From Botryllus schlosseri (Eukaryota), in NCBI GenBank assembly GCA_051294905.1, contig CM119373.1, positions 7,316,001 through 7,380,000 of the forward strand: a stretch of DNA of 64,000 bases, written 5' to 3'. The position numbers and the translations under genes were made by a program. This document shows positions 19,660 through 63,179 of this stretch, piece by piece. A model generated the notes under the pieces. It had not been told where the DNA came from, did no database searches, and saw only the letters and a program-made list of their open reading frames with translations. Numbering within the stretch: position 1 is the stretch's first letter; each line of letters starts with the position of its first letter.

Positions 19660-19935
19660 ACCATGGAGATTGTGATTGGGAATCGCATCTCTCTATAGAC
19701 GTAATTTTCGAAACTGTATTGGTGTATCTAATGCACTAGCAGCAAAATCTTCCCTTCAAAAGTGGTAGGAGCAAACGAAGCTTGTGGAAGTAGGCTTGGC
19801 GTCATGCCTTCTTACTCTGCATTCCCAATCCTTCCTGTATTTTGCGTTGGAAGGAAATGAATGGAAGGATCTGTTCTTCCCCAGTTTATTGCCATTGGTG
19901 GCACTGCATTTATAAATACAGCAGTATTTCGGCAT
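19660..19935 (-). pseudogene. THAP zinc-finger domain relic
   Basis: MPKYCCIYKC...FHSFPS...RKDWECRVRR...FVCSYHF*REDF...RL*RDAIP: canonical THAP C2CH pattern with two in-frame stops. Confidence 0.85.
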
Positions 19936-20042
19936 TATATTTTAGTAGGTGTTACTAAATATTTTATTTCCTTTCCTCATTCTATTATTGATGAAAAAAT
20001 ATACATATAACTGTAATCTTGTCGTTTTTATACAGTCTACAC

Positions 20043-22625: not shown

Positions 22626-22911
22626 GACACTATATTTTGGAGGCCGATTCCGAGTCCGACAAACGTCCGATACGGTTGTATCGGGTATCGATGAACGCGT
22701 GGTCTGGAGACGAATGCAGCGGTACCTCGTTTGGCCCTGTAGCGTCTGCAGTCGTGACGGAACCTCGGATAGCCCTTCTATGAAAACCCGTATTCCGTCT
22801 TGTCGGCATTTAAATTCACGGATTTTCCTTACAGTAACATTGAACTATACGATCCTCATTATCTATATATACACAAAAATACACGTGGAGTTCTTCTACT
22901 TCGAAACTACG

Positions 22912-26689: not shown

Positions 26690-29100
26690 TCTGGCATGAT
26701 GAAGCATTTCAATGCTGGCAAAAATGCTTTCTGTAAAGGGAATTGAAGTATAAATCAGGATCAAGTGACAATGCGTGAACAGTGAACAGACACACACCGC
26801 GGAATTGTTCGAGCATCGATGAAAGGCCGAAGTTATAATGTTGAGATTTGTGTTGACGGCTCAAAACGTTCCTGCCTCAATTGGAATAAATTCTGAAGTC
26901 ATATGGTTGCAACGACCATACACGCTAATCGTTACGAAGTATCGAAAACTAATCTACCGGATTCATGGCTGTCAAAGCCGAAATCATCCTTTGGGGGTTC
27001 CATGTCCCAGACTCCAAACCATTCCAAGCAATTTCACGCCCAGTTAACTCCAGCGATAAAAATATATATTTGAACTTCTGAAAGCCGCATCTAGTAATTG
27101 CCAAATGTTATGGATTATTGGACCAGAACCGGATACATCTCTTGAAACACCGTGGTGGAAGAATTGATTCCTGAAACACCGTGGTGGAGGAACTGATTCC
27201 TATATATCTCAACGACATCAATGAGTTTTTGGAGAAGTGCAAAGTTGATTATAGTCAGGTAGAATGGTTGGCAGATGTGACTGCAGCACATCGAGAGTGT
27301 CTAGTCCAGTGGTTCCCAACGTGGGCGATATCGCCCCCAGGGGCGATTTGTCGGTCCAGGGGGGCGAAAATAGCCAAGGGGGGCGAAAACGGACGAAGGG
27401 GGCGATGACGCGTTGAAATGGCGTCCATGACCGTAACTGCCACACCCAAACCCCCAATTGGGATGGGGGGCTCCAGCTCGAAGGGGGCACACAACTTTTT
27501 CGAAAAAATTTCGCGCTGCGCGTCATTTCGTGCTTATATTTCACATATTTCTTGCTTATTGAATACCCTTCCTCCAAGAAATAATACGCACGAGTTATAG
27601 AAATGGGCATCTCGGCGTCAGCCATTATCACACCATGACGCACCAAGGCATATGAATTTTCAGGCCATTTAACATGCGACTCCGAGAAGTGTGCCAGAAC
27701 GAGAAAACCTTGGCGGAAAAGGACTGCCTTTCTGCTGACCGACTTCGATATATACACGATAATACATACATATTTAATTGTCCATAGGCGCCTAAATGGC
27801 TGGCGCCAAATGTTCCTGTCCTGGCAATCAGAACCCCACAAAAAATGCCATATCGCAGAGAAAAATTAATTGTCAGTGCAGAAATGCCAATTTGAAATCG
27901 TGTGCGTCTTTTAGTTTAGTACGTATGGGCGATTCGAATATCTTTTGACATAACAGACAGGCCACGAAATGTCATTACGTAACGAAGTCATTACATTACA
28001 CCCACGGGTCCGCCCGAATATGTTCAATTATTATTTACGGGCCCTACATTTTCCAAGACACCTCACTCAGCTTTACCGGTAAATCTGTATACATGAGCAG
28101 AGAGAGGGTAAAAATTGACAGCAATATATATGCAATTCCCGATCATATAGACCGATTCAATCATGAATGATAGAAATTTTTCGCGCTTAGCGCGAATTAT
28201 GCCAACTAACTAAAGAGTCCAACAATTTGTGCTAAGAAGTAGCGGTAAAGAGGTATCGGGGGAGTTGGGTCTGAGGGGTGCATAAGTTTGCTTTATCGCC
28301 CTATGGAGGGGGGTCAAGACCAACGTATGGGGGGGGGGCTGACGAAGTGCTGTTACGGTCCTTTGGGAATCAAGTCGGAGAAATCACCTTTTCTGTTAGT
28401 TAACTTACCAAAATCTAGCTGGAAAATTGTAATTTCGAGGTCGAGCCGAAAAGTTGACCTTTTTTCTTGGTCAACTCGCCGGTGATTTCAGTCTGTATGC
28501 CCATTTTTCGGTTCCCAATATTTGGGAGGCGATGAGTCGAAAAAGGTTGGGAACCACTGGTCTAGTCCAATGTGGGGATGTATCAATTTTGGAAAAGTGA
28601 TAGACAGCTATGACCGAAATCATTTATAGATAAATTCATATCCACGTCTCTTTTCAAGACACTTACTAAAGATGCCATACAGCGGGGACAGGGACAGGTG
28701 CATGAGAATATTACAATAAATAAATATTCTGAGGTTACAGGAAGAGGTCAAAAGTTGGTTTAGTATCATTTCCTAGCGGTTTTTTGAGCAGCAATCCCGA
28801 TGGAGTAATTATCGCAGAAAATGGGCGTGTTGAGGTTGTAGTGGAAGCAAAGTGCCCACAATTGAGAAAGTGCTCAAGTAGGAACTCGCAGGAAAACAAA
28901 GCAACAAAAGGGATTTTATTTGACCTCAGACTTGCAGGTAAATGGATCGCACCAGTAGTCCGGTACTGGCACCAGCTACAGGCCCAAATATTTGTAACTT
29001 ATGCACATGTTTCAAAGATTTTCAAATCATCGAGGTGGAAAAGGACATCAGCTGGACGAGATTGAACATTCACAAGTTGACGGATTTTACTTCAATGTCC
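26690..29100 (+). pseudogene. SWIM-region plus YqaJ nuclease relic, copy 2, split by element C
   Basis: KHFNAGKNAF...RGIVRASMKGRSYNVEI (pre-SWIM pattern) upstream; SSNPDG...VVEAKCP...YWHQLQAQIFVT downstream. Confidence 0.7.
27307..28559. mobile_element. Non-autonomous hAT element C containing a B copy (about 27426-28363)
   Basis: TIR cagtggttcccaac / gttgggaaccactg; exact TSD gtctagtc. Confidence 0.92.
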
Positions 29101-39187: not shown

Positions 39188-39988
39188 TGTTTCTTGCTGT
39201 ACATTTATTATGGCTTCCATGCGCCATGAACCAGAGATGAGATAACAGATGAATCGGTCAAGCACGAGTAAGGCAGTCATGCACAGTAGGGCTGTTCAAA
39301 AATAACTTTTTTTCCTGAATCTTGCTGGTTACTTGATTAAATCGTTAGGTTGCCTTAAAAAACGACGCATACCAAATTTGAATTCATTCCGACAAATATT
39401 CGCGGGTTACGTAGAGTTTAAAAATTTTGGATTTGCTCAAAAACGCAAATTTTTTTTTTTTCAAATTTTTCTGCCAACCCCATGAAATTGTTGGGCTGTC
39501 TTCAAAAACTATGCAAAACAAATTTGACTCAATTCCAAGCCGTAGAAGCGGAGTTATTTCAGTTTTTATTCGATAATTCTGGGATTATCCTTGATTGGTG
39601 GATAATCCAACAATTATCACCGAAAAACTGGAATAACTCCGCTTCTACGGCTTGGAATTGAGTCAAATTTGTTTTGCATAGTTTTTGAAGACAGCCCAAC
39701 AATTTCATGGGGTTGGCAAAAAATTTGAGAAAATTTTTTTTTTGCGTTTTCGGGCAAATCCAAAATTTTCAAACTCTACGTAAACCGCGAATATTTGTCG
39801 GAATGAATTCAAATTTGGTGTGCGTCGTTTTTTAAGGCAACCTAACGATTTAATCAAGTAACAAGCAAGATTCAGGAAAAAAAGTTATTTTTGAACAGCC
39901 CTAATGCACAGTTGGGTAAGGCATGACGTCATACCTTGTTACTTTACAGGGAAGCATCGTCATAATACATACAATAACCCACGTAACA
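39188..39988 (-). repeat. 3' LTR, interrupted by foldback element K
   Basis: Matches 49703-49878 after removing 39287-39903 and one TSD copy; about 7 substitutions in 176 bp by manual comparison. Confidence 0.95.
39287..39903. mobile_element. Foldback/palindromic DNA element K
   Basis: About 300-bp near-perfect inverted arms with a ~9-nt loop; termini tagggctgttcaaaaataac; exact 8-bp TSD atgcacag. Confidence 0.93.
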
Positions 39989-39998
39989 TCCCCTTCTC
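39989..39998 (-). promoter_or_regulatory. Polypurine tract
   Basis: gagaagggga on the minus strand immediately before the 3' LTR TG. Confidence 0.85.
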
Positions 39999-40061: not shown

Positions 40062-40830
40062 TCAAGTTGTAACATAGTCTTGCAAGTATGCTGGTCGAAT
40101 AACTGTACGGCTTGGTCTGCTGCTACTGGAACCAGATAACGACCCATTAGTGCCGCTGTTCACTACTGCTGGTCTGGCAATCGAAATGTCGTCAAAGTCA
40201 AATGCAACATGCGGGCGAGTTACAGTAGTTCGAATAAACTTTCTGTTGCGTCGGTAGATCGTTCCATCTGTCGCCTTAACAATGTACGATCGATCATTCA
40301 GTTGCTTAATCACCACCGCTTCGAGCCACAAGCCATTTTCTGTCCTTTTGAATCGAACCTGTTGACCAGGACTCAACAGGGCGAGGTCTTTTGCACCACG
40401 ATTGTAATACTTTGCCTGTTTTCTTTTCCGATCCATAAGCGATGGAATGACATCAGAAACAATTTTCGGCTCAAGCAGTTTAGTTGCTATTGGCAACAAG
40501 GTCTTGGTGCGTCTTCCAAATAGCCTCTGTGCTGGAGAGCCAGGAACAGTCTCGCCTGGAGTGTTCCTCCAATCCAACAGTACAATATTTATGTCTTTTT
40601 TGTCAGTTGTCGCTTTACGAAGTAACGATTTGAAGATTTTGACAGCTGATTCCGCCTTTCCATTCGATTGGCTGTGTCCTGGAGAGCTGGTCACATGTTC
40701 AAACTCGTATTCCTTTGCAAATGCCTCGAAGTCATGAGCAGCATAGCATGGACCATTGTCAGTAATCAATTTCTCGCAGATTCCATGACGTGCCATATGT
40801 GATTTTAAGCGGAGAATAACTGCTGACTCA
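40062..40830 (-). pseudogene. Gypsy integrase C-terminal part (HHCC and first catalytic Asp deleted)
   Basis: LITDNGPCY...SNGKAESAVK...SPAQRLFGR; the frame begins abruptly at a deletion junction near 40830. Confidence 0.9.
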
Positions 40831-40831
40831 G

Positions 40832-43522
40832 AATAGTGCCTTTTATGGACGACGGTATGACAATACGATCACCATTCAGAACGATTTGATCCTGAAATGT
40901 CAACTCCTCTTTAAAACAGTAGAAATTTCGAATTGATTGGGGTACCAGCTTGGCTTCATTCGGCCACCCATGTTTTATAAAAGAAATTAACGTGTTCATG
41001 ACAGAATCAGAGATTGTTGCTTGGCTGACCATGCCGAGCGTGGAGCTTGATACCGGTATAGTATTCAACATTACGATATGTTTAATCTGTTGAAAGATAT
41101 CAAACACATCAGCAGTTTCTGCGTCTTTGGGTGACTTCGGAATGTACGCACGACTCAACGTATCCACCACAAATAATTGTGATCCAGGCTTGTATATCAC
41201 CTCGAAGTCATACTTTTGGAGCTGAAGTAACATGCGCTGTAACCGTTTTGGTGCATTAACCAGACTTTTCTTTGTGATGACTTCCAGAGGTTTGTGATCG
41301 CTTTCTACTGTTACAAAGCTGCCATAGACATATAACTCAAATTTTTCCATGGCAAAGAGAATAGCAAGCAATTCTTTTTCGATTTGCGCATAGTTGCACT
41401 CCGTTGTTGTCAACGCCCGTGAAACATAGGCAACAGGGTGAGAGTTTTGCAACACACAGCATCCTAGCCTCTTTGAACTGGCATCACATTGCAGTACCAT
41501 AGGTGCGTTTTTGTCAAAATATTGTAAAACTGGCGCGTTGATCAAGGTTTGTTTTATTTTCTCAAAGCATGTCCCATGTAGGATTGGATCCCATATGAAC
41601 GCGTTGTCTTTTTTAAGGAGTTCGCGGATGGGAGCGGTTATATCTGAAAGCTTCGGGGCAAAACGCTGCAGAAAATTTGTCATCGCTAAAATTCTCTGGA
41701 CGCCCTGCTTATCTGTTGGAGGGGGCATTTTTATGATGCCTTCAATTTTGCTCGATGAGGGTTTTAGACCATCTTTTGAGATGGTATGGCCTAAGTAGGG
41801 CACTTCAGTCTGCAGATAGCGTAGTTTCGCTTTATTCAGTTTAATACCAGTTTGTTGACAGCGTTTCAACAGTTCAAAGAACTTTTTCTTATAGTCCATA
41901 GTCGCCTCTTCAACAGTATCGCCCACACCGTAAATCAAGATGTCATCCGCGACAGGCGTGATTCCTTCCAGGCCGTCCAGCGCTATCTTCAGTCTTCTCA
42001 TGAAGTCCTCCGGTGCTGGGCTGATTCCGAAAGCCAGTCGGAGCCATCTGTAACGACCATATGGAGTACCGAATGTAGTTAGATAACTACTAGTATCATC
42101 AAGTTCTACATGCCAAAATCCATTTTTTACATCACACAGTGTAAACACTTTGGCATTGTGCATATATGGTAACACATCATCAACTGTCGGCATTGGATAG
42201 TTGTTGCGTTTTAGGGCTTTGTTCAGCGCCAGTGGATCCAGGCACAAGCGGATATCTCCAGATTGCTTTTTTACAGTGACCAGATTAGATATCCAGGGAG
42301 TATGGCAATCCACGGGAGCTATTATGTCAGCATCAACCAAACTATCAATTTTCTCCTTCACTTGTGCTTCAAGTGCCAGGGGTATTTTGCGAACAGGCAT
42401 TTGTACAGGATTGATAGTGTCATCAATTTCCAGATGAAGTTTACCCTCTAGCTTTCCCGTACCATTGAAAACATCCGAAAATTGTTCACATATTTGATCA
42501 AACTCCAGTGTAGCAAAATTGGCGAATTCAGGATCCTTCGCTGTAAGAGCTTGTACTGAAGGTTCCTCGATCATTATGTTTTCAAAATTGCTCGTAATTA
42601 GTTTCATCCTTTGAGCATCGGCGGAACCAATGATGGAAGTGTTCGGCTTCTCAACCACTACAAATTCTAGCAAGTATTTTTCACCATTCTTTTTATTGAT
42701 GATTTCCAACGTTGTTATTCCGAGAGGCCTTATCACTTCCTTATTATATACAACCAGTTTCATAGAAGTAGGTTTCAAGTTGAGCATTTTTGTGTCACCA
42801 GTTACATTCAAGTAATCTCGCCATGAAAGAACCTTTACGGTTGCGCCACAATCAATTTGGAATTTTACATACATGTTAACCAGGTATAACAGAGCAAATA
42901 TTTTCTTAACATAGGATTCCTCCGTAGCACTCACATGTTCAAACGAAAGAACTTCGTCATCCTCTTCTTCATCCGACTCAATGCGATCAGCTGATATCAC
43001 CATCACAGTTGCCTGACATGCCACGGCAAAATGGTCTTTTCCGTTACAGCGTGAACAAGTTTTGCCGTTAGCCGGGCAATATCGCCGACCAAAAACATGC
43101 ACCTTTCTACAAAACTTGCAGAGTTTGGGGAGCTCTTCCGATTGAAGTGTACTACCATCACATCCTCGATTCATTTTAGAGTCCCTTTCAGCAGCTGGCC
43201 ATTTCCTTTGCTTGTACTTATTTTGTATCGCATGAATTGCAACGTCATCTGACGTTAGAGTCATTTTTTTCATTTGCAGAGCAGTTGACTCAAACAATCT
43301 GCAGCTCGAAATACAGGAGTTCAATGTAAGTCCTGCCTCTTGTAGGAGTTTTCTTCTCAGCACAACATTGGATATACCACACACAATTTTGTCTCTGAGA
43401 AGCTCATCCTCCAAGGTTTTAAAATCACAGGTTTTTATCAGCCTTCGCAGCTGTTCGTAGTATGTGTTGAAAGATTCATTTGAAGCTTGACTGCGACTGA
43501 AAAAACAGTACCTCTCGTATAT
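40832..43522 (-). pseudogene. Gypsy gag C-terminus, protease, RT and RNase H (open frame)
   Basis: Gag Cys/His knuckles; FQIDCGAT protease; DVKNGFWH; VADD; LQCDAS; ELLAI; DHKPL. Confidence 0.95.
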
Positions 43523-44091
43523 TAGGCTTACCATATTTCGGAAATGAAAAAAGAGGACACTTTTTCAGAAATTTCAGACAAGCAAAACTGGAGAAGAATT
43601 CTCAAAAACCGGTAAATATTTTCCACTTCATGATCGGTAAAAGGTCATCACTTCCGCTCAAAGCTCAAAATCACGTTTTTCACTCTCCACATTGCCAGGT
43701 GGTTGACTAAAAAAAAAAAGGTCATCACTACCGCTCAGAGCTCAAAATCACGTTTTTCACTCTCCACATTGCCAGGTGGTGCCAGGTGGTTGACTAAAAA
43801 AATAAAAAAAAAAGGTCATCACTACCGCTCAGAGCTCAAAATCACGTTTTTCACTCCATATTGCGGTCTTCTTTTCGCTCAAACCTGAAATCACCACTTT
43901 TCCCTCCGAAATACCAGCCGGAGCTTCACTTCTGCGCTAATTTGCGGCATATCACTCGCAATTTCCGACATTCGAGTCTGACAGTCGTCGAGTGAGGACG
44001 TCTTGACAGCGCACGAACAGGAGACGGAGGATTATTACCTTGATTACTGTCTTGTTACGGTTAGTACTGTACAAGACAGTCGTATAGTAAA

Positions 44092-45207
44092 ATGGAGCAA
44101 GGTCAGGAAGTCATGGACCTGCGCAAACAGTCGCAAAAAAGGAAAGGCGATGATAGTATTGATAAGGATGATCCGACTAGCAAGATACGGGTTACGGAAA
44201 AAGTCAGGAATCCTTCTCAGGAGCAGCCAAAACACTTTGTTATCATATCGGGCAAAGAACGACAGATGAAGAACTACCTTCCTACGGCTGTCAACAGATC
44301 CCTGTTCAAGTTGATAGGAGCGTATAAGGAAATCAGAATATTCAGATCGGGAGATCTACTATTGGAATGCTACAACAGAAAACAAACAGACATCATGCTG
44401 AACTGTGATGATCTAGGAGAAGAAAACAAACGAATCCCTATCACAGTCAAGAAATTCCTTCCGGACCCCACAAAATCCAGAGCAGTTATATCGGGAGTAC
44501 CATTGGAAATTCCAGAATATGAGATCAAGCCCATGCTCACTTCGTACAACACTATATTCATCAAGAGGTTGAAGCGCAGATATAACGGGAAATATATTGA
44601 TTGTCAATCAGTTCTTATAGGTTTCAGTACCATTGAATATCCCGAAGTTCTACATATGGAGTATTTACGGTTTCACACCAAACAGTACACACCTGCCCCA
44701 AGACGGTGCTACAAATGCAATCATTACGGTCATCGAGCCAAACACTGCAGAGGATCAGCAGTTTGCTCCTATTGCGGCAGTAAGGAACACTCGCGAGACA
44801 AATGTGATAGCGACATGTACTGTGTAAATTGCAAAGGTACTCATAGTGCAGCATACGGCGGCTGCGCAGTATATAAAGAGGAAAAGTCCATTGAGAAGGT
44901 TCGTAATACGGAACATTTATCTTACTGGGAGGCTAAGACCCAGGTCCGAAAGAAGAAAACAGATCGAACGACCACACCCAAGGCTTGGAGCAACCCACCT
45001 GGAATTACCAGACAAAATGCCGCCGAAGACCGCATACAAGCAGCAAAAGATATGCAGATCGATTGGGCGCGGGTGTCCAACATACCCACAGCGAAAAATC
45101 CTGTTGCCAGCAGTCAGCGAGAAGATAATGACAATGAAATTATGATAATGCAGAGCCAAATTCTGATTGAACGCTTACAAACCCTGGCAGCTTCTACTGT
45201 ATCATAG
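44092..45207 (+). CDS. LINE ORF1 (gag-like nucleic-acid-binding protein)
   Basis: 371 aa with three Cys/His knuckles: CYKCNHYGHRAKHC, CSYCGSKEHSRDKC and CVNCKGTH. Confidence 0.9.
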   Translation: MEQGQEVMDLRKQSQKRKGDDSIDKDDPTSKIRVTEKVRNPSQEQPKHFVIISGKERQMKNYLPTAVNRSLFKLIGAYKEIRIFRSGDLLLECYNRKQTDIMLNCDDLGEENKRIPITVKKFLPDPTKSRAVISGVPLEIPEYEIKPMLTSYNTIFIKRLKRRYNGKYIDCQSVLIGFSTIEYPEVLHMEYLRFHTKQYTPAPRRCYKCNHYGHRAKHCRGSAVCSYCGSKEHSRDKCDSDMYCVNCKGTHSAAYGGCAVYKEEKSIEKVRNTEHLSYWEAKTQVRKKKTDRTTTPKAWSNPPGITRQNAAEDRIQAAKDMQIDWARVSNIPTAKNPVASSQREDNDNEIMIMQSQILIERLQTLAASTVS

Positions 45208-45343
45208 CTGAGGTTGTGCAAAAAGTACTCGCAGCCGCTCTTAACCGCGAAGAGGCTGACATACTTAAAATTATGTCTACTTGTTTAAGCACAGGTGACG
45301 TCGAACCAGAAAGTTTAATTTAAACGACTCTGGCCTAGTCATA

Positions 45344-48300
45344 TTGCAATGGAACTGTGGATCTATCTACCGAAAGTTACCAGAACTGAAACGATATATT
45401 TCGTCGCTTTCGCAAAAGCCAGATATAATTATGATACAGGAAGCACACCTTATACATAAATATCAGCCAAAAATGGATGGGTATTTACTTGAACGAAGAG
45501 ACAGAAATATCCATGGGGGAGGGTTGGCAACTTTTATTCGCGAGGGTTTGGAACCCAAAGAGATGCAATCTCAGCAAGATGCCTCATTAGAAACACAGAT
45601 CTTTAAGATAGGTGATTTCAAGCTAATTAACGTCTACGCTCCGCCCAGCGACCACGAAATATCATTTTCATTCCTAAAAGAATGCAAAGCGAAAACACTG
45701 GTTTTCGGAGACTTTAATGCTCATCATGAAACCTGGTCACACTTCTCGAACGAGCGGGGCAAATCCATCGACAGTGCTCTTAGCGAAAATAATTTAGTAC
45801 TTTTGCATACAACAAGTCCAACAAGATTGAACTTGGCAATCAACGCAAGGCGCAGATGGAGTCTGTTAGATCTTTCGTTCGCATCTTCAGATATCGCTCA
45901 CAGATGTACCACCTCTGTAACCGAACATTTCATGGGGAGTGATCATTGCGTCATATTGACATATTTAGACTGCAATATTGAACAATCAGGCAACGTAAAA
46001 ATTCCTAGATGGAATTTTGAGAGGGCGGATTGGGTCAAGTTTGCGGAAATTGCCGATGAACTCACAGCCATGAATACTGCCGATGAACTCACAGCCATGA
46101 ATACAAGTAATCTAACATTAAATGAAAGCGCCGAGCTCATCACACGCTGCCTGCTCCAGGCAGGATTGCAATCCATACCTTCAACCTCTGCAGCCAGTAG
46201 TCATGGCAAAATACCTGTACCTTGGTGGAATGAAGATTGTGCGAAAGCGCAGAGATTACGACGTGCCGCTTATCTCAAAATGAAACGAACATTCTCCCCG
46301 CAACATGTTATAGCATTTAAACAGCGAAGAGCTGCATGCATGCCGAAGAACAATCATGAGTGCGAAGAAACAGAGCTGGCAGAACTACTGTGAAACCCTT
46401 GGCAAACAAACCAGTTTATCAAAAGTGTGGGGCATGGCAAAAGCATTTACTGGGCGGCGCCAATCAGTATTTATTCCCGCACTTACCACGGTCAACTTGT
46501 TGCATCAAGTGACACAGAAAAGGCAAATTTGTTAGCAGACATGTACAGTCAAGTTAGTAGTGATAATAACTACTCCAGCACTTTTTCAAACAGAAAAGCT
46601 TACTTCGAGAAAAATACATTTGACTCGCTGCCACTGGAGCTGGAAAACGATGATGCGATAAACTTCCCATTCACTTTGGACGAATTGAAGCGAGCGATAT
46701 CAAAGAAAAAGCCCACTGCAACTGGGCAAGATAAGGTCAGTTATGAAATGCTAAAACACTTGAGCGCAACCGCATTGGAACAATTATTACGTTTATATAA
46801 TGACTCCTGGAGCGAGGGGACGGTGCCTAAGGCCTGGCTCCATTCCATCATAATACCGATACTTAAATCCGGGAAAACGAAGTCATCGGCAGCATCTTAC
46901 CGTCCCATTGCTTTAACCAGTCATCTGTCTAAGATAATGGAGACAATGATAGCAAATCGATTAAAATGGTATCTGCAACAGCATGATATATTGAGCCCCG
47001 TTCAGTCTGGATATCGGACAGGCCGATGCACACTTGACCATATTCTAGCACTACATGATGATATCTATAAAACGATTTACAATCAACGCTCCGCAGTTGC
47101 AATATTTGTGGACTTCGAACGTGCGTACGACACGGTCTGGCGCAAGGGCCTCCTGGCAAAAATTTTTGCCATAGGTCTACGGGGTAAAATCATTAGGTGG
47201 TTGTCGTCATTCCTATCGAAGAGAACCGCTCAAGTTCGTGTGGGAAATGATCTGTCACAGACATTCGATATCGAGACAGGCATTGTACAGGGCAGCGTAA
47301 TCAGTCCAATATTGTTTTTGATCATGATTAACGACCTTCCTGAATGTCTTTCCACCAAGAACGCTCTGTTTGCTGACGATCTTGTGTTTTGGGAGTCTGG
47401 ACTGAACATTACCGAGGTATCCGACTCCTTACAGAATGACTTGGATTGTCTTAAACAGTGGTGCGATCGATGGGGAATGAAAGTCAATACAACAAAAACG
47501 GTGTCAGTTGTCTTTAGCAACAAAAGGAAAATACCAAATCTCCAATTTAAATACAGTGGTCAGAACATAGCGACAGCAGAATCGGCAAAGTACCTCGGAA
47601 TTACCTTCGACAAGAGGTTATCATATAAACTACATGTTGAATCTGTTTTACATAAATGCACTGCTCGAATTAACTTTCTGCGGATGATTTCAGGAACCTC
47701 TTGGGGAGCTGCAAAAGAAACTATGCTAACCCTGTATCGTACTCTTATTCGATCTATAATTGAATATGGAATTGAGGCATTTCATTTTGGTCACCGACGA
47801 TATCTAGAAAAAGTCGAGCGTCTACAAAACAACGCGCTGCGGCTTTGTTGCGGAGGGATGAGGAGCACCCCAATTATTTCTATACTGTCTGCGTGTGGGG
47901 AAATGCCACTGGACCTACGACACAGGTATTTATGTATGAAATTCAGATCCAAGGTGAATGCTGATTTGCAGCACCCGTGGCGAGAGCAGCTTCTCCAATT
48001 ATCGTGGGAGGAACAATGGCCGAAAAGAAAGCAATTCGTTTGCTTCAATCAAATTACATATCGACCGAATTGCGACGAAAGTGGAAATGGTCTGTTGCGG
48101 TTGAGTAAAATAACCCATCCACCTTGGACGTTGCGTCGAGCACGTATAGATTTAACATTGACGAGTCTGCAGTTTAAAGAATGTTCCTCTTTGTTACCGC
48201 TAATCAATGAACATATCTGTAGACGATTCCCGGGATACTTGCAGATTTTCACTGACGGATCAAAAACTACGACGGGTGCTGCGGCGGCGTTTTATGTATC

Positions 48301-49075
48301 GCGAACTATCAACGGTGCAACCACTATCATAAAGGAATCGAGTTCCTTCACTGCAGAATTGGTGGGAATAAGCTTAGCTCTACAATGGGCTGTGGAAAAC
48401 AGCAATACGAATATACTGATACTCGTGGACTGCTTGAGCGCAATTCAAGCGATTGACAATGTGTATGGGCGATCCCATCACCTCGTCGCACCAATTTTAC
48501 AGACGATCCATCGGATATCGGAGGCAGGATACGAGATCGCTATTGTTTGGATACCTGGTCATTATCGAATTCCCGGGAATGAAAAGGCAGATGAATTGGC
48601 CAGACGAGCGAGTCAAGCCAGTGTGCAAACGACTGAATTCAAACCTTCCGTACGAGACATTGCTGCTTCGCGTCGGAAGGCGTGCATCGAGCTATGGAAT
48701 AACCGCTATTTACAATCGGATAAGTCACAGCAATATAAGGAATGTTTTCCCACCGTATACCACAGAGCAGACGTGAATGGCCTACCGAAAAGGTATCAAG
48801 CGATTACGTTCCGACTACAATCCGGACATTGTGGACTAAAAGCACATCTATTCAAATTGGGAATAGCAGATTCAGCCAATTGCTCAACGTGCCGCCAAGA
48901 AGAGAGTGTCACCCATTATTTATTCACGTGTCGAAATTATAGACACCAGAGAAGAGTTCTCGAGGACACGTGTCGGAGGAAGAATATCGCTCCCACCGTA
49001 ACAAACTTTTTGACTGACACGCATATTTTTCCATACGTTGTGGAGTTCGTTCTCGCAACGAAGCCATATATTTGA
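45344..49075 (+). pseudogene. LINE ORF2: AP endonuclease, RT, RNase H and C-terminal Cys/His motif; one stop inside compensating frameshifts
   Basis: QWNC, GDFNAH, SDH; SYRPIAL, QGSVISP, FADD; FTDGS, WIPGH...GNEKAD; CSTC...HYLFTC. Stop codon at 46391. Confidence 0.93.
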
Positions 49076-49702: not shown

Positions 49703-49878
49703 TGTTTCTTGCTGTACATTTATTATGGCTTCCATGTGCCATCAACCAGAGATGAGATAAGAGATGAAGCGGTCAAGCACGAGTAAGGCAGTCATGCACA
49801 GTTGGGTAAGGCATGACGTCATACCTTGCTACTTTACAGGGAATCATCATCATAATACATACAATAACCCACGTAACA
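49703..49878 (-). repeat. 5' LTR (176 bp)
   Basis: TGTTACG...GAAACA on the minus strand; matches the 3' LTR. Confidence 0.95.
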
Positions 49879-50249
49879 ACTACTTCCATCCTAAAGAAAT
49901 GGTGCTGAGACTATCTAAACTTAGTCATTTATTATTGGTTCAAAACACTGGAAGAGTAGGATTTGACGTGATAAGTACGTAAAAATGCCGGCCAGGTCCC
50001 GCTTTAGTACGAAGACCGGAATATCTAAGGGATGAGAAGTATAGGAAACATCATGCTGATCTCACAAATATACTTTTGATACTCCGTGACTCGATTAAAG
50101 GAGACAACATCAAAAGAGTCCTCGCAGCCAGTTACAGTATCGGTGATAAATCCACAGATTTCGTCACTTGTACAGTTGGAGCTACGGCGGAAAAGAAGGT
50201 GTTGAGAATTAAGATTCAGTCGTTTCCCAAATAACGTCATCGTTATAGC

Positions 50250-52215: not shown

Positions 52216-52849
52216 CATACACGTGGGGCGAGATCGACTCTAGCGCGTAGAGGAGTAGCGTCTTATTGGGTAAGTCAGATTATAGAGTATGACTGGAGTG
52301 ACGACTCGATTGTTATCCCATTGTTAGCCGGCAGAATGGTCACGGTCAGATGGATGCACCCAAAACAGGATAGCTCAGTGCTTGTTTCAATGGCGTTCAA
52401 GGCGATTCGTCGTGTATTTCTTGAAGTTGCGTCGGAATTAGTTAGACTGTTCAACATTTAGGTAGCGGTGGCGAGTCGTTATGACTGGTGAATAATACTG
52501 TGTAGCCTATGTTACATTTCTCACGAGATTGATGTGATATTGTGGCTTTGATCCTTGGTAGAGTTTGCTACGTATATGAATATAATGACAGAAGGTATGG
52601 GATATCTGGTTCGTGTGCATTGGCTATTGTGAGATGAATTCATGGAAAGAACGACTGAAGAATACTACAAAGTGAACAAGTGGAAAGATCTTGAACTATA
52701 CCTATATGCAATTCACAATATCGTTGATTGAAAATATGTCCTATATTAACTGCAGAAACTCGAGTATGAATATAACAAATAATATTGCAACTGTCTTGTC
52801 GTCTTATATAATGCCTGTCCGATAACCGCAGAAACTTGAGTATGAGTAA

Positions 52850-55514
52850 CAGGACCGTAACTGCCACACCTCAAACCCCCCAATTGGGGGGGGGCGAGCT
52901 CAAAGAGGGCTCAAAATTATTGAGTATTTTTCAAAAATTTATGCAACTTTTTCAAAAATTTTTCGCTCTGCGTGCGATTTCGAGTTGCCAACTTTCTTAG
53001 TTATTTGGTAGCCTACTCTTCCCCAAGACAAAATACGCAAGATCTATCGAAATGGACATATCGGCGAGACATTTAAAGTTTTAGAACATGTAACATGCGA
53101 CTCCAAGAAGTGTACCAGAACGATCGGCAGCGAGAAAACCTGGGCCAAAAAGGGACTGCCCGCTTATGCTGACCGAAAACTTCGTTATATACCGTATGCA
53201 AAATGCGTATAGGTTCAATTGTCCATAGGCGCCTAAATGACTGGCGCCGAATGTTCCTGTCTTGGCAATCTGAACCTCAGAAGACAAATACCATTCCGCA
53301 GGGAAAAATTGTATACCAATTTGAAATCGTGTGCGTCGTTAATCTAGTACATTTGGGCGATTCTATATTTTTTGATATAACAGACAGGAGATCACAAAAT
53401 GACATGAAACGAAGTCATACCAACGGGGCCGCCCGCCTGAATATGTTTAATTATTATTTACGGGCCCTACAGTTTCCAAGCCACCTCATTCAGCTCTACC
53501 GGTCAATCTGACAACGTGAACAGAGAGAACAAGAAATTGATAGCAATATATATGCAATTCCCAATATTATATTGACCGATTTTATCATGAATTATCGAAT
53601 ATTTTCGCGCCTCGCGCTGGCTCACTAAACTGTGGCCCTTATTTCGTGACAAAAGCAAACAACGTGATGGGGGGGGGGGGGTTTATCACCCTATGGGAGC
53701 CCAAGACCCAAGTTTTATTGGGGGCCCTGGCCAAGTGCTGTTTCGTTCCTGCGAACGGGTATACGCCCGAAGATGTTCAATTATTATTGAGGGGTCCTAC
53801 CATTTCAAACACACCTCACTCATTACCATTAAATCTGATTACGTGCGCAGAGTGAGGATAAAAATTGATAACAATATATATTCAATTCCCGATCATATTG
53901 ACCGATTAAATCAGTGGTTCTTAACCTTGCCCACAGCGCCCCCCAGGGGGCGCTGGCGACTTTGAAGGGGGGCGGAAGCGCTCAGGGGGCGATATGGGGG
54001 GCGCTGGGCTCAGGGGGGCGGTATGGGGGGCGCTGGAGGAAAATGGCTTCGCAGTAGATGATGTGGTGATAGAACTTATCCTTAATGAGTATTCAGGGCA
54101 AATTAACACCGAAAGCTTCGTTACATATAGCCTTCAAAATACATATAGGTTTGATTGTCCATGGGCGCCTAAATGACTGACACCGAATGTTCCTGTCTTG
54201 GCAATCTGAACCCCAGAAGCCGAATTCCATCTGGCAGGGAAAAATTATATGTCAGTGAGGAAATGCCAATCTGAAATTGGTGCGTCTTTTAGTTAAGTAC
54301 GATTGGGCGACAGGGATATTCCTGTTGGGCGATATCCCCTCACAATGTTCGCTTCAAGTTTTGACGAGTCTGCGCACACTCAACAACTCACTGTGCTGAC
54401 CTTTGGATAACAGTGCGTAACGACTAAAAAAAGGTAATAAATTCGGATTTGTTGTGCGCAACGTAGATTTCCTGTGCACAGAGACCGTGTCAGCACTGGG
54501 CACGTGCGCGGCTTAGAGGGAACATTGCACCTCACTCAGCTCTACCGGTAAATGTGTTTACATAAGCAGAGAGAGGATAAAAATTGATCTGAATATACAG
54601 GCAATTCCCGATGATATTGACCAATTTAATCATTAATTAGTGAAATTTTTCGCGCTTCGCGCGACTAAGCGAGCATGGCTGCCTCAGTAAATGGACACCC
54701 AATGTAGATACCTAATAGGCTATCAGCCAATAGGGGACAGCCTAATGGAGGTCTGGGAGTGAAGTTTCCCGGAAGTTTGGTTTATCACCCGATGGGGGCC
54801 CTGGACCAACGTTTTTTGTTAGGAGGGGGCTGACGAAGTGCTGTTACGGCCCTGGTAACGAATAATTGTACCTGCGGGCACGCCCGAATATGTTTAATTA
54901 TTGATTACGTGCCCTATATTTTCCTATACAACAGCTCACTCATTGCTACTGGTAAATCTGATTACGTGGGCTGAGAGGATAAAAAGTTTATAGCGAGTTA
55001 TATATGTAATTACCACCTTTCCATTCATGCATTATAGAAAATTTTGGTACCTAGGGCGACCAGGCCACACAAACTTTGCTGACCATCAAAATCACGATAT
55101 GGGGCTCGTGGGGGCGAAGCCCTCAGAGGTTCAGCTTATCGCGCTATGGGTGCGCAAGGCAATCGTTTTTAGGGGGGTTGACGAAGTGCTATTACGGCCC
55201 TCCCTCTTACTCATTGTCTTTATTACATTCCTTACAATATGAAGTTGGGGGGCGCTGGAGCACGATAATTTTTGAAAGGGGGCGCTGGAAGAAAAAAGGT
55301 TAAGAACCACTGGATTAAATCATGAATTTTGAAATTTTTCGCGCTTGGCGTGTGTGGACGACCAAATCTGCCCCACTAAACGGACGGTGAACACAGATGA
55401 TGAGTAGCGGTAAACATCCTATAGCTTCGTCCCCCAGAACTTCGGTTTATCACCCTATGGGGGGCCCATGACCAACGTTTTTTTGGGGTCTGACGAAGTG
55501 CTGTTACGGCCCTG
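52850..55514. mobile_element. hAT family B copy nested in M and containing A2
   Basis: TIR caggaccgtaac / gttacggccctg; degenerate TSD (atgagtaa / atgacaag). Confidence 0.8.
53912..55312. mobile_element. Composite hAT element A, copy 2
   Basis: Same TIRs and interior as A1; exact TSD gattaaat; contains the mini-MITE at 54343-54527. Confidence 0.93.
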
Positions 55515-55801
55515 ATGACAAGAACAAGAGCCTTGTGTAATGTTAATGTTCTGCTTGAGCTCGACTCACAATAGCCAGAGCTTACTCCTTGAAAGTGTGC
55601 AAAATCGCACTTGAAGGGAACTCGTTGTCATTGCCAAGAACACAGGAAGACGTCTGCCGGTCGACATTAGTAGTAAGCCAATGCACCACGTCAAGGTTTC
55701 GACCAACGCATTGGTTTCCTTTTTTAGGTAGGGAACCTCAATGTGGATAGGCAGCATTTGCCACAGAGAGAAAAAACTACCATACTAAAAGAGCATATTG
55801 T

Positions 55802-56832
55802 TCATTTTTTTTTCAAGCCATCTCGCAAACTTTTGGAAAATTTGGAGGACTTTTTTTGCTTCTCATGCAATGCAAACTTTGCAAAATTGTGAGACAAGAT
55901 GTTGTTCAAGTGTCTCATTGCCTTGTCCATGACATCCTCAACCTCATTTAGGTCTGAGCCAGATTGAAGTGACACAGTATGAATTAATTTGTTATAGAAT
56001 GGATCACAGTGAATTGCGTCAAGTACCCTGAAAAAAATGATCTTTTTCAGGGGTTTTCCCATTTCTTTACTGTGGATAACATAAAAGCGGAGAACCATGC
56101 CATGAAACTGTTCAGACGGGCTCTTCAATCCACCGACTTTCTTCTGCATCACTTTAATGAGGTTTCCCGATGGCGCTGCAGATGTTAGGCATGTGGCAAT
56201 TGCTTCGTTAGCTTGCTTAGAAATGGCTCCTAAAAGCACTCCACCAATATATTCAAGTATGTCTAAAAACATGTCAAAGTTTTTCCATGGAAAGGCATAG
56301 TATCAAAGGCTATTTACTTACCAGATTCCTTGCTGTTGACTCCTCCAATCTCTGTGATTGGACCCTGTTCTTTACCGCACACGAGAGAATCAAACATCTT
56401 CAAAAGTAATGCTGAAGCTGGCAATTGCGGCAAACCCAGCAACTTGTTAGCTTGGTGACAGATATTTGAATAATGTTGATAAAATCCGTCAACACCAAGT
56501 TTGCAATATTCAGAATGGAGTTGTTTCACCAATGGAACAGCTTTTGTCACGTCTAGTTCCTCGAATGATGGGGCGCATTCAAAGTATTTTTTGCTATTTA
56601 CGCAAGCCCTCTTCAAAACAGCAATTACAGCATCCTCAGATATATCCCAATTACTGGTGGGAACTTTATGATTTTTGTAATGTTTTTTCAGAGCTTTCAC
56701 AGTCGGAAAGGATGCTTCGCATTCCTCACAAATCACACCTTTCCAGTTATCGAGTCCTTCGAAACATTCTTCAATTTCCATTTCAGTTAGTGCCTCCCAG
56801 TCATCCCAAAGTGATGCAGCTGAATCAGTCAT
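55802..56832 (-). CDS. Two-exon gene of about 323 aa: C2H2 zinc finger plus P-transposase C-terminal-like region (exons 56832-56322 and 56262-55802)
   Basis: 59-bp phase-1 intron GTAAGT...TTTTTAG joins two stop-free ORFs. Motifs: CEECEASFPTVKALKKHYKNH; LEYIGG; KVGGLKSPS; KSLRDGLK. Confidence 0.8.
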
Positions 56833-57473
56833 GATACCGATTTCTATCCGTGTCGAAATATGATCTAAATCTGGCCAAAAATATAACAGAGGCTACAAGG
56901 TATTATTCACTAGTCATAACGACTCGCCACCGCTGCCTAAATGTTGAACTGTCTAACTAATTCCGACGCAACTTCAAGAAATACACGAAGAATCGCCTTG
57001 AACGCCATTGAAACAAGCACTGAGCTATTCTGTTTTGGGTGCATCCATCTGACCGTGACCATTCTGCCGGCTAACAATGGGAGAACAATCGAGTCGTCAC
57101 TCCAGTCATACTCTATAGTCAGATTTTTACGATTTGATATTTCCTAAACATAATTGTGGCTTCTTTGTTGTGTAGATACAGATATTTATGGCCAATGCTA
57201 TTATGTAATTCTAATTAGAAACTAAGTTGAAAAACATTGTTGCTACACGTCGGTCAGTCAGTAACTAACAGTTGTTGCTATTATAATCACAGGAATTGGA
57301 GTGTCGAAGAGTATACGAGAGATGCTTGAAAGAATGCTGCCACGAAATGCCAGAATGACCGGTGAGAAGAAAACTAAGTCACTTACTGACCTCTATGGAC
57401 TGGACACGCTGATACGTAATCTGAACAAAACATAACAAGATTCATTTTTTCATATGAAAATGATTGTTTAAAT

Positions 57474-59162: not shown

Positions 59163-59817
59163 CCTCAATTAAAAGTATATACCGTAAATTTCAGACATAT
59201 GCATATACACATACATATCATTTCAAGTATTGAATGGAGGTAACCACGGGGCACCAAAACATAGAGGCATAAGGGAAATTATTAGCAGTAAATTGAATAT
59301 CAAGTGTCTTAAAATACGCTATCAATTTATCAGATCCTTATCAGATCAGCTCTGTCTCAACATTCTCGGCTGTAGCAAGACCTCAATTAAAAGCATACCG
59401 TACATTTCAGACATATGCATAAATACACATACATCTCATTTCAAGTATTGAATGGAGCTAACCATGAGGCACCAAAACATAGAGGCATAAGGGAAATTAT
59501 TAGCAGTAAATTGAATATCAGGTGTCTTAAAATACGCTATCAATTTATCAGATCCTTACCAGACCACATCAGCTTTGTCTCAATATTCTCGGCTGTAGCA
59601 AGACCTCAATTAAAAGCATACATTTCAGACATATGCATAAATACACATACATATCATTCCCGAGTATTGAATTAAGCAAACCAGGAGGCATCAAAACTTA
59701 GAGGCATAAGGAAAATTACTAGCAGTAAATTGAATATCAAGTGTCTTAAAATGCGCTATCAATTTATCAGATCCTTACCACATCAGCTCTGTTTGAACGT
59801 TCTTGGCCGTAGCAACA
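59163..59817. repeat. Tandem repeat, 3 units of about 220 bp
   Basis: cctcaattaaaag recurs at 59163, 59381 and 59604 with colinear unit sequence. Confidence 0.9.
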
Positions 59818-62238: not shown

Positions 62239-63120
62239 CAGCACCGTAACTGCCGCACCCCAAACCCCCCAATTGGGGGGGGGGCGAGCTCTAAGGGGGC
62301 CCAAAATCATTTCGTGAATTAGCATAAATCAGAGAGTTTTTTTTTTAATTTGTGCAATTTTTTCAAAATTTTTTCGCGTTGCGCGCGAATTCAAGTAGCC
62401 GTTTATCTGTATTATTGAGTATTGGCCCATCACCGCGCCACGACACACCAAGACATACAATCAAGTTTTAGGCCATATAACATGCGACTCCAAGAAGTGT
62501 GCCAGAACGATCGGCAGCGAGAAAGGCTTGGCCGAAAAGATCTATATGCTCTTATGCAGCCAGAAGACTTCGTTATATAGGCTATACAAAATACATATAG
62601 GTTTAATTGTCCATATAGGCGCCTAAATTACTGGCGCCGAATGTTCCTGTCTTTGCAATCTGAACCTCACATGACAAATACCATCCTGCTGGGAAAAAAA
62701 TTATGCCAGTGAAGAAATACCAATTTGAAATCGTTTGAGCGATTCCATATTTTTTGATATAGCAGACCGGAAGTCACGAAATAACATCATGTAACGAAGT
62801 CATATCAACGAGTCCGCCCGCTCGAAGATATTTAATCATTATTTACGGGCCCTCCCATTTTAAGACATTTCACTCAGCTCTACCGTTAAATCTAATTACG
62901 TGAGTAGATAGGTCAATAAATTGATAGCATAATATATATGCAATCGCCGATCTGATTGACCGATTTTATCATAAATTACCGAAAATTTCTGCGCTTCGCG
63001 CTGGCTCACAATACAGTACAGAACGCGAACAACGTGATGGAGGGGTCGTTTTATCATCCTATGGGAGCCCAGGACCCACGTTTTTGGAGGCCTGACGAGA
63101 TGCTGTTTCGTTCATGCCAA
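62239..63120 (+). mobile_element. hAT family B copy with degenerate right end
   Basis: cagcaccgtaactgcc start; colinear with 52850-53760. Confidence 0.75.
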
Positions 63121-63179
63121 CGGGTATACGCCCGAAGATGTTTAATTAGAAAGTCGAGGCAAAAGATTTTACCTGTTAG

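What the first reader, a model, noticed from the sequence alone, without database searches (positions are those of the whole stretch)
52281..57117. P-like element lacking a transposase core but keeping an intact spliced zinc-finger accessory gene
Seen in sequence: about 230-bp near-identical TIRs, TATAG termini, an exact 7-bp TSD (gtcagat), and a stop-free two-exon ORF of about 323 aa with a canonical 59-bp intron. The protein has an acidic N-terminus, one C2H2 finger, and a C-terminal YIGG...GGL..PS...KSLR..LK region. Established knowledge: 7-8 bp TSDs and a YIxG/GGL-PS C-terminal region are typical of P/THAP9-type transposases. Inference: this is a deletion derivative of a two-gene P-like transposon whose poorly characterised second gene (a DNA-binding module plus the transposase C-terminal region without DDE) is still intact, although nearly all other DNA-transposon ORFs in the window are decayed. 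It could be a trans-acting regulator or repressor, a required cofactor, or a gene being domesticated. Possible transposase remnants lie on the + strand on either side of the nested B insertion (weak).
Basis: partly seen in the sequence, partly recalled or inferred. Interest (0 to 1): 0.75.

Follow-up and report, generated by a model that had tools for sequence, protein, structure and literature searches.

The report
P-type transposon keeping only tail-domain gene
This is a small cut-and-paste transposon of the P-element kind that has no cutting enzyme of its own but keeps an intact, expressed gene for the enzyme's detachable tail domain, here fused to a zinc finger. It belongs to a little-known group of P elements whose transposase is made by two separate genes.

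Summary
The element has 261-bp TIRs (52281-52541 / 56857-57117, about 97% identical over the first 200 nt), TATAG tips and an exact 7-bp TSD, GTCAGAT. On the minus strand it carries a stop-free two-exon gene with a 59-nt GT..AG intron.

Searched exon by exon, the product has no direct Pfam or PDB hit except one C2H2 finger. A profile of exon 2 finds a family of roughly 280-310 aa proteins. Nine of 15 members touch Pfam Tnp_P_element_C, and the family profile hits the C-terminal chain of Drosophila P transposase (6p5a_B, E 8e-4).

In four loci from three assemblies, one of them Ciona intestinalis, such a gene lies convergent with a P transposase that stops right after its RNase H core. Two of these elements have 7-bp TSDs and CAAAG/CATAG tips. 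The window copy has no transposase remnant.

Copies differ with dN/dS 0.15-0.19. Bulk RNA-seq covers the gene and uses the predicted splice sites.

Best reading: a half-autonomous derivative of a split-transposase P element. No full-length partner with these TIRs was found.

The scan has already noted the split layout on other DNA of this genome. The gene-only derivative with a zinc finger is what this finding adds.

The parts
52274..52280 (.). left target-site duplication GTCAGAT
   Evidence: Exact 7-bp direct repeat of 57118-57124, directly outside the TIR tips.
52281..52541 (+). left terminal inverted repeat, tip TATAGAGTATGACTGG
   Evidence: the repeat finder I1. Aligned to the right arm: 97.5% over 200 nt, 93% over 261. 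The motif TATGACTGG occurs at the tip and again at 52480-52488.
52542..52860 (.). element's own left interior, non-coding; boundary with the nested repeat is approximate
   Evidence: No Pfam hit for any ORF. No tblastn match to P transposase exons of relatives. No THAP-like C-X2-4-C start is visible.
52861..55520 (.). nested unrelated repeats (array of about 330-400-bp units plus an inner element with 23-bp TIRs at 53906-55318); not part of the transposon proper
   Evidence: Same repeats at 10164-11817, 27731-28248 and 62562-63148. Read depth jumps about 75-fold at 55464-55527 and falls to element level from 55528.
55521..55801 (-). sequence downstream of the gene (3' flank, end of transcript near 55790-55850)
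   Evidence: RNA-seq run X23 has depth 0 at 55528-55783 and coverage begins at 55784-55847. DNA-like runs cover it at element depth. No coding signal.
55802..56262 (-). exon 2: CTD-like region (EYIGG, GGLKSPSE, SHNFAKF, basic tail KSLRDGLKKK) plus stop codon 55802-55804
   Evidence: Translation. hhalign against the family of stand-alone CTD proteins: probability 99.9%, E 2e-32 over all 152 residues. The family matches PF12596 and 6p5a_B.
56263..56321 (-). 59-nt intron, GT..AG
   Evidence: Sequence. Same position with GT..AG in L001 (52 nt), L002 and L003, and more diverged than the exons. Exact joint 56262|56322 in a contig of run X6, and the same donor and acceptor in 6 RNA-seq reads of X23.
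56322..56832 (-). exon 1: acidic N-terminus, C2H2 finger, helical region
   Evidence: ORF. Residues 88-165 align collinearly with columns 47-125 of the family profile, E 1.5e-4. 96% and 80% identical ORFs in L002 and L001.
56668..56730 (-). C2H2 zinc finger, aa 35-55 (C-X2-C-X12-H-X3-H)
   Evidence: Pattern match. Pfam zf-C2H2_6 scores 23 bits, E 8e-5, just under the 25-bit cut-off. Conserved in L001 and L002. Absent from the 15 other family members.
56857..57117 (-). right terminal inverted repeat; the gene's ATG lies 25 nt inside its inner edge, so the promoter is probably in or next to it
   Evidence: RNA-seq reads cover it up to the tip. L002 and L001 share its inner part upstream of their ATG.
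57118..57124 (.). right target-site duplication GTCAGAT

Best explanation
The element is a non-autonomous ('half-autonomous') member of the P superfamily. It comes from a lineage whose transposase is split between two convergent genes. One gene encodes the THAP-HTH-RNase H/GTP-binding core. The other encodes a protein of about 300 aa whose C-terminal half is the P transposase C-terminal domain (CTD).

This copy has only the second gene. The gene sits just inside the right TIR and reads inward, as in the two-gene relatives. In this subfamily its product has also acquired one classical C2H2 finger near the N-terminus.

The protein most likely works in trans as the CTD subunit of a transposase whose catalytic subunit is encoded elsewhere in the genome. 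[quoted passage not shown] This is a module that can plausibly be supplied separately. The element itself would be mobilised through its 261-bp TIRs, making 7-bp duplications.

Shown: the anatomy; family membership; profile-level homology to the CTD; the two-gene layout in relatives; purifying selection; transcription and splicing.

Inferred: origin by loss of the catalytic gene; assembly with a catalytic partner; any role of the finger, perhaps recognition of this family's own ends.
For: Anatomy.

Family: a profile of exon 2 finds 19 proteins at E<=1e-3 among 1.84 billion, most of them 277-312 aa with the match in the C-terminal half. By hhalign, exon 2 against the family gives E 2e-32, and exon 1 residues 88-165 align collinearly just upstream.

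CTD homology: 9 of 15 members hit PF12596, two of them above its cut-off. The family profile hits 6p5a_B, P transposase, at E 7.7e-4, aligning EYIAGYVIKK...GGLIKPSE.

Layout in relatives: L004, L009, L010 (Ciona intestinalis LOC113475742) and L012 have the CTD gene on one strand. The opposite strand carries THAP-like first exons in three of the four (a weak Pfam THAP hit in L004, the C-x2-C start by eye in L009 and L010), an HTH (PF12017, L010 and L012), RNaseH_N (PF21787, 25.6-37.5 bits, all four) and QD.LEAFFG exons. Only 240-290 bp separate the last RNase H exon from the CTD gene's stop in L010 and L012, which leaves no room for a CTD on the transposase.

Ends: L010 has perfect 30-bp TIRs, tip CAAAG and TSD CTTTAGC. 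L009 has 38-bp TIRs, tip CATAG and TSD GATAGAG. Galileo and 1360, both of the P superfamily, also make 7-bp TSDs, and Galileo has long TIRs (PMC3698922, PMC4168063).

Selection: window vs L001 gives dS 0.70, dN 0.10, ratio 0.15 (Fisher p 2e-27). Window vs L002 gives 0.19 (p 3e-6). The intron and TIR interior diverge faster than the exons.

RNA: bulk RNA-seq run X23 covers 55784-57127 but not 55528-55783 or the flanks. The predicted donor and acceptor are used in X23 reads and in an X6 contig.

CTD role: PMC7776569.
Against: - The window protein itself reaches no Pfam or PDB threshold for the CTD. The link runs through intermediate relatives, and the Pfam matches cover only about 30-45 residues.
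- No copy with these TIRs and a catalytic gene was found. The Logan contigs are about 1 kb or less, and two metagenome scans were empty. Origin by deletion and the existence of a matching partner are therefore unproven.
- The spliced X23 reads carry a one-base deletion 7 nt upstream of the donor that would shift the frame. The best-expressed copy in that sample may therefore be a broken one.
- RNA reads reach the TIR tip and run on into varied flanks, so part of the signal may be read-through from neighbouring sequence.
- dN/dS between copies cannot separate selection for transposition from selection for repression or a host function.
- AlphaFold models of the single exons were poor (pLDDT 48 and 52), so there is no structural support.
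Confidence: 0.62

Rival explanations
1. The protein is a transposition inhibitor. Many non-autonomous copies would make a CTD-plus-finger protein that occupies the element ends or the catalytic subunit unproductively. This would be functionally like the KP and 66-kDa repressors encoded by internally deleted or alternatively spliced Drosophila P elements.
For: Deleted P elements are known to encode repressors (PMC7776569). This protein lacks all catalytic parts yet is conserved (dN/dS 0.15-0.19) and expressed. The subfamily-specific C2H2 finger could add DNA binding of its own.
Against: [quoted passage not shown] This protein keeps the opposite end and has no THAP. Apart from the finger, it is an ordinary full-length member of the second-gene family found in complete two-gene elements. 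The simplest role is therefore the normal subunit role.
Confidence: 0.15
2. It is a gene on the way to domestication, or already a host gene. The TIRs would be a relic, and selection would act for a cellular function of the zinc-finger/CTD protein.
For: An intact ORF in a window where other transposon ORFs are decayed, with purifying selection and expression. P transposases have been domesticated repeatedly (THAP9; PMC7776569).
Against: At least four copies exist in two subfamilies, 80-96% identical at the protein level, each with the TIR interior upstream of the ATG. One copy is broken by an 11-nt duplication. The TIRs are about 97% identical with an exact TSD, which indicates recent insertion. 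In other copies the ends abut different flanks. All of this is typical of a mobile family.
Confidence: 0.1
3. It is a captured host gene carried by an unrelated long-TIR element (Pack-MULE-like transduplication), with only a chance resemblance to P transposase motifs.
For: Long TIRs, a small element, one intron-containing gene and no transposase. No direct database hit for the window protein.
Against: The family is found inside P elements next to CTD-less P transposases in four loci. The family profile picks P transposase as the top hit among 177,635 PDB sequences. The TSD is 7 bp, as in those elements, not the roughly 9 bp that I know from general knowledge to be typical of MULEs.
Confidence: 0.04

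Closest known systems
C-terminal domain of Drosophila P-element transposase / THAP9 (Pfam PF12596; PDB 6p5a, 6pe2)
   Same: The EYI(A/G)GY...GGL(I/K)xPSE block and a basic C-terminal tail. The family profile hits 6p5a_B at E 8e-4, and 9 of 15 relatives touch PF12596.
   Different: Here the domain is a separate protein of about 320 aa, with its own acidic N-terminus, a C2H2 finger and a helical region. It is not the tail of an 87-kDa enzyme. The window protein itself is too diverged to hit the Pfam model.
Two-gene (split-transposase) P elements, e.g. the Ciona intestinalis element around LOC113475742 (L010 9843-14503) and the earlier notes of this scan
   Same: The same protein family. The gene lies next to one TIR and reads inward. 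7-bp TSD and Y-A-W-A-G tips.
   Different: The window element has no catalytic gene at all. Its TIRs are 261 bp rather than 30-38 bp. Its CTD gene has an intron and a zinc finger, which those relatives lack.
Galileo and 1360 (P superfamily, Drosophila)
   Same: 7-bp TSD. Galileo also has long TIRs and many non-autonomous copies (PMC3698922, PMC4168063).
   Different: Per those papers, Galileo and 1360 encode a single transposase gene. No separate CTD gene is described for them.
KP and 66-kDa repressors of the Drosophila P element
   Same: Catalytically dead P-derived proteins, encoded by deleted or alternatively spliced elements, that act in trans (PMC7776569).
   Different: They retain the N-terminal THAP and dimerisation part. 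This protein retains the C-terminal domain and has no THAP.
Other two-component cut-and-paste systems: PIF/Harbinger (transposase plus Myb-like protein), MuDR (mudrA/mudrB), ProtoRAG (RAG1-like/RAG2-like) - from general knowledge
   Same: Two genes within one pair of TIRs. Derivatives that keep only one gene depend on the other being supplied in trans.
   Different: In those systems the second protein is not a detached domain of the ancestral single-chain transposase.

Membership tests
P superfamily DNA transposon | Terminal inverted repeats flanked by a 7-8-bp target-site duplication | tested here: met
   261-bp TIRs and an exact 7-bp TSD. 7 bp is the rule for Galileo and 1360, 8 bp for P (PMC3698922).
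P superfamily DNA transposon | Encodes a THAP-HTH-RNase H/GTP-binding transposase | tested here: not met
   No such coding sequence or remnant between the TIRs (Pfam on ORFs; tblastn with 25 transposase exon fragments of relatives, all E>1). The copy is non-autonomous.
P superfamily DNA transposon | An autonomous relative sharing the same TIRs | tested here: inconclusive
   The window holds only this copy. Two metagenome scans were empty. The source genome could not be searched.
Stand-alone CTD protein of two-gene P elements | About 280-310 aa; C-terminal half with EYxGGY, GxLxxPS, LSYxFAKK and GLRxxLK motifs; helical N-terminal half | tested here: met
   hhalign E 2e-32 for exon 2 and E 1.5e-4, collinear, for exon 1.
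Stand-alone CTD protein of two-gene P elements | Gene lies just inside one TIR, reads inward, and is convergent with a CTD-less P transposase gene | tested here: inconclusive
   Position and orientation are met: ATG is 285 bp from the tip, against 158 bp in L010 and 114 bp in L009. The convergent partner gene is absent from this copy.
Pfam PF12596 Tnp_P_element_C | Score above the curated cut-off (22.6 bits) | tested here: not met
   No hit for the window exons even at E<=10. Among relatives, P0010 (23.3 bits) and P0021 (24.8 bits) pass and seven more score 17-21 bits.
Classical C2H2 zinc finger | C-X2-4-C-X12-H-X3-5-H with conserved F and L | tested here: met
   CEECEASFPTVKALKKHYKNH at aa 35-55, conserved in L001 and L002. 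The Pfam scores of 18.5-23 bits are just under the cut-offs.
KP / 66-kDa type P repressor | [quoted passage not shown] | tested here: not met
   No THAP hit. The retained part is the C-terminal domain.

The most novel reading that the evidence does not exclude
The zinc-finger/CTD protein is a specificity adaptor, not just a leftover. Elements that carry only this gene would form a self-sustaining 'hemi-autonomous' lineage. They would be kept intact by selection because their own CTD subunit, through its acquired C2H2 finger, recruits catalytic subunits made by other P families to this family's long TIRs (for example to the repeated TATGACTGG motif). That would amount to a division of labour, or parasitism, between transposon lineages built on a naturally split transposase.
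Probability: 0.2. Interest if true: 0.75.

Novelty: new variant of a known kind. Interest (0 to 1): 0.6.

Why it matters
P-element transposase is a textbook single-chain enzyme. Elements that make its C-terminal domain from a second gene show that this DNA-contacting module can work as a separate subunit. That parallels the RAG1/RAG2 and PIF/Harbinger two-component systems.

A derivative that has lost the catalytic gene but keeps the CTD gene intact, selected, transcribed and spliced is a natural experiment. It makes three questions testable. Does the CTD act in trans? Is it limiting or family-specific? Can a newly added zinc finger retarget a transposase?

In practice, genome annotators currently label such genes 'uncharacterized protein' (Ciona LOC113475742). 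A naturally split P/THAP9-type transposase may also be of use in tool design.

Tried and rejected
- Direct Pfam, NCBIfam and PDB sequence searches of each exon found only sub-threshold C2H2 hits.
- PDB profile searches with the shallow exon alignments found nothing relevant.
- Word-index protein searches with exon 1, exon 2 and the 191-aa read-through ORF P0003 found only near-identical fragments.
- AlphaFold2 on each exon alone gave pLDDT 48 and 52, too poor for a fold search, so none was run.
- The transposase remnants proposed inside the element are rejected.
- A TIR-tip scan and a protein-pattern scan of metagenome contigs were empty.
- Look-ups of earlier findings by sequence were blank.
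- An 8-bp TSD and hAT-like TAGAG tips were considered and rejected, because the flanks then do not match.
- A MULE / Pack-MULE reading was rejected on TSD length and on the family's constant linkage to P transposases.
All searches were exon by exon, by reference.
- Kimbacher et al. 2009 on Ciona P elements is not in the library. I cannot say whether it mentions a second gene.
Full report
**What is there**

Window 52281-57117 is bounded by inverted repeats, 52281-52541 and 56857-57117. The 28-nt tips are identical, with none expected by chance. Arm identity is 98% over 100 nt, 97.5% over 200, 96% over 230 and 93% over 261. In the inner, less similar part, an independent copy (L002) shares the states of the right arm, so that asymmetry is ancestral rather than decay.

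The tips read TATAG...CTATA. They are flanked by an exact GTCAGAT at 52274-52280 and 57118-57124. An 8-bp reading does not fit. Contigs and reads from other copies leave the window sequence 1-2 nt after 57117.

About 2.66 kb of the interior (roughly 52861-55520) is an unrelated repeat array that recurs at three other places in the window. Without it the element is about 2.2 kb.

**The gene**

- Strand and exons: minus strand, ATG at 56832, exon 1 to 56322, a 59-nt GT..AG intron (56321-56263), and exon 2 from 56262 to the stop at 55804-55802. It is in frame across the junction, about 323 aa.
- N-terminus: 10 acidic and no basic residues in the first 30.
- Zinc finger: aa 35-55 form a textbook C-X2-C-X12-H-X3-H finger. 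Pfam scores 23 bits, just under the cut-off.
- C-terminus: the last 25 residues hold 10 K/R.

Every search used window:56323-56832:- and window:55805-56260:- separately.

**Other copies and selection**

Word searches found only near relatives, from one Logan run and one ENA assembly:
- L002: 96% protein identity.
- L001: 80% protein identity.
- L003: broken by an 11-nt duplication.

All keep an intron at the same place. L001's intron is 52 nt and far more diverged than its exons. L001 and L002 also carry the inner TIR sequence upstream of their ATG.

Nei-Gojobori counts, made per exon and summed as numbers:

| Comparison | dS | dN | dN/dS | Fisher p |
|---|---|---|---|---|
| window vs L001 | 0.70 | 0.10 | 0.15 | 2e-27 |
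| window vs L002 | 0.114 | 0.021 | 0.19 | 3e-6 |

. The protein has been under purifying selection while the family diversified.

**RNA**

Four runs of the same species label were laid on 55400-57300. Only about 6% of the bulk RNA-seq run X23 was read. In that sample:
- X23 covers 55784-57127, with depth up to about 17.
- X23 has no read at 55528-55783, which is still inside the element, and none in the flank.
- DNA-like runs cover 55528-55783 at the same depth as the gene, so the X23 signal is not DNA carry-over.

A contig of run X6 has exactly the predicted joint, 56262|56322. Six X23 reads from four start points use the same donor and acceptor. Read on the minus strand they give ...AATCTG|ACATAC.... 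They also lack one G seven bases upstream of the donor, which would shift the frame. So the intron is real, but the copy most expressed in that sample may be a damaged one.

Reads also cover the TIR to its tip and run on into varied flanks. Part of the transcription may therefore be read-through.

**What the protein is**

Neither exon hits Pfam's P-element models or any PDB chain directly.

A profile of exon 2 (A2) was searched against 1.84 billion representatives. It found 19 proteins at E<=1e-3. Apart from fragments and one spurious 4551-aa repeat protein, nine are 277-312 aa with the match in their C-terminal half. They share EYLGGY..KA, G.L.YPS, LSYTFAKKLF and GLRG.LK motifs.

- hhalign places exon 2 on the family at 99.9% probability (E 2e-32).
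- Exon 1 residues 88-165 align collinearly just upstream (E 1.5e-4).
- The window protein is therefore a full-length member. The finger is an addition that the 15 other members lack.
- Nine of the 15 touch Pfam PF12596 (Tnp_P_element_C), two of them above its cut-off. These matches cover only about 30-45 residues around the EY.GGY block.
- The family profile's best hit among 177,635 PDB sequences is chain B of 6p5a, the C-terminal piece of Drosophila P transposase (E 7.7e-4). It aligns EYIAGYVIKK and GGLIKPSE.

**Context of the relatives**

This is the strongest evidence. Four loci hold a family member with a P-type transposase on the opposite strand, tail to tail.

| Locus | Source | CTD-family gene | Transposase exons |
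|---|---|---|---|
| L004 | ENA ERZ21736675 | 10001-10927 (+) | 12275-20913 (-) |
| L009 | ENA ERZ25072152 | 1362-2195 (+) | 3204-7119 (-) |
| L012 | ENA ERZ25072152 | 5224-6084 (+) | 6121-8082 (-) |
| L010 | NCBI GCA_018327825.2, Ciona intestinalis LOC113475742 | ORF 10001-10906 (+) | 11147-14347 (-) |

- Pfam finds TNP-like RNaseH_N above its cut-off in all four. It finds the P-element HTH in L012 (above cut-off) and L010 (weaker), and a weak THAP hit in L004. The C-x2-C start of a THAP exon is visible by eye in L009 and L010. The QD.LEAFFG motif that ends the RNase H fold is visible in each.
- In L012 the transposase stops 37 bp from the CTD gene's stop.
- In L010 and L012 only 240-290 bp lie between the last RNase H exon and the other gene. 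That is too little to encode a CTD.
- L010 is a 4661-bp element with perfect 30-bp TIRs (tip CAAAG) and a 7-bp TSD, CTTTAGC.
- L009 has 38-bp TIRs (tip CATAG) and a 7-bp TSD, GATAGAG.

The window element shares the 7-bp TSD, the Y-A-W-A-G tip, and the position and inward orientation of the gene.

In the literature, the P superfamily members 1360 and Galileo make 7-bp TSDs, and Galileo has long TIRs (PMC3698922, PMC4168063).

**What is missing**

No transposase coding sequence or remnant lies between the window's TIRs:
- Pfam on all interior ORFs gave nothing.
- tblastn with 25 transposase exon fragments from the four relatives gave nothing better than E about 1 inside the element.

The same search did find a decayed first-exon remnant of a P-type transposase. 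It matches the stretch just after the zinc-binding part of the THAP exons of L010 and L004. It lies at 50007-50123 (+), 2.2 kb outside the element, and it is unrelated to these TIRs.

**Mechanism**

In the cryo-EM structure of the Drosophila enzyme the CTD is all-helical and joined to RNase H by a disordered linker. [quoted passage not shown] It contacts both transposon-end and target DNA and ends in a basic tail (PMC7776569). That geometry makes a detached subunit plausible.

I therefore read the window element as a half-autonomous derivative. It supplies a CTD subunit, here with an added C2H2 finger. It depends on a catalytic subunit made elsewhere, and it moves through its TIRs.

The steps not shown are:
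- origin by deletion (no full-length copy with these TIRs was seen);
- physical assembly with a partner;
- the role of the finger.

The rivals are a KP-like inhibitor, a gene being domesticated, and a captured host gene. They are weighed in their own sections. The last is the weakest.

**Novelty**

Four full-text searches found no paper describing a P element with a separate CTD gene. However, Repbase reports and Kimbacher et al. 2009 on Ciona P elements are not held.

Earlier notes of this scan (s1-249635, s1-268359, s1-249646, s1-249685) already describe the split layout on other DNA of this same genome. I confirmed the layout independently, but on other organisms' contigs, not on theirs.

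What this finding adds:
- a transposase-less derivative that keeps only the CTD gene;
- its zinc finger and its intron;
- evidence of selection and splicing;
- the 7-bp TSD and Y-A-W-A-G end signature shared with complete two-gene elements.

Noticed in passing
window 50007-50123 (+): Decayed remnant of the first exon of a P-type transposase, 49% identical over 39 aa to the stretch just after the zinc-binding part of the THAP exon of the Ciona two-gene element (E 3e-8). It is preceded by a stop codon. It lies 2.2 kb outside the studied element and shares no TIR sequence with it.
   Followed up: partly
L010 9843-14503 (Ciona intestinalis, GCA_018327825.2 AP043569.1): The RefSeq gene LOC113475742 ('uncharacterized protein', XP_078482418.1) is the CTD gene of a young two-gene P element with perfect 30-bp TIRs and a 7-bp TSD, CTTTAGC. 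The annotated model diverges at its 3' end from the simple 301-aa single ORF at 10001-10906.
   Followed up: partly
window 56322-56329, seen in RNA-seq run X23: The spliced reads come from a copy or allele that lacks one G of AAGGAA, seven bases before the donor. That would put exon 2 out of frame, so the most expressed copy in that sample may be defective.
   Followed up: no
window 39188-39996 and 49703-49886: Two copies of one repeat (93-95% identical). The first is interrupted by a 612-bp foldback element (39292-39903) made of two nested inverted-repeat pairs, 166 nt at 96% and 134 nt at 91%. The second copy sits just upstream of the THAP remnant.
   Followed up: partly
window 52861-55520 (also 10164-11817, 27731-28248, 62562-63148): A high-copy repeat built of about 330-400-bp units. 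It contains an inner element with 23-bp TIRs (TTAAATCAGTGGTTCTTAACC) at 53906-55318. In one run its depth is about 75 times that of the host element. In another copy of the host element the same CAGTGGTTCT end abuts the TIR tip.
   Followed up: no
window 52288-52296, 52480-52488, 57102-57110: The 9-mer TATGACTGG occurs at both TIR tips and again about 200 nt inside the left arm (3 matches, 0.38 expected). The inner copy is next to the reverse complement of the tip's GACGACTCG. These are possible protein-binding sites.
   Followed up: no
window 22504-24112 (+): Overlapping ORFs with a weak PWWP hit and an IS1595/Merlin-type DDE transposase hit (32 bits).
   Followed up: no
window 40062-43534 (-) and 44092-49075 (+): A Gypsy-type pol (RT, RNase H, integrase fragment) and, next to it, a LINE with long open APE and RT-RNase H-zinc-finger ORFs of 349 and 882 aa.
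   Followed up: no
window 59205-59785: Three tandem units of about 218 bp, 78-95% identical over 144 nt.
   Followed up: no
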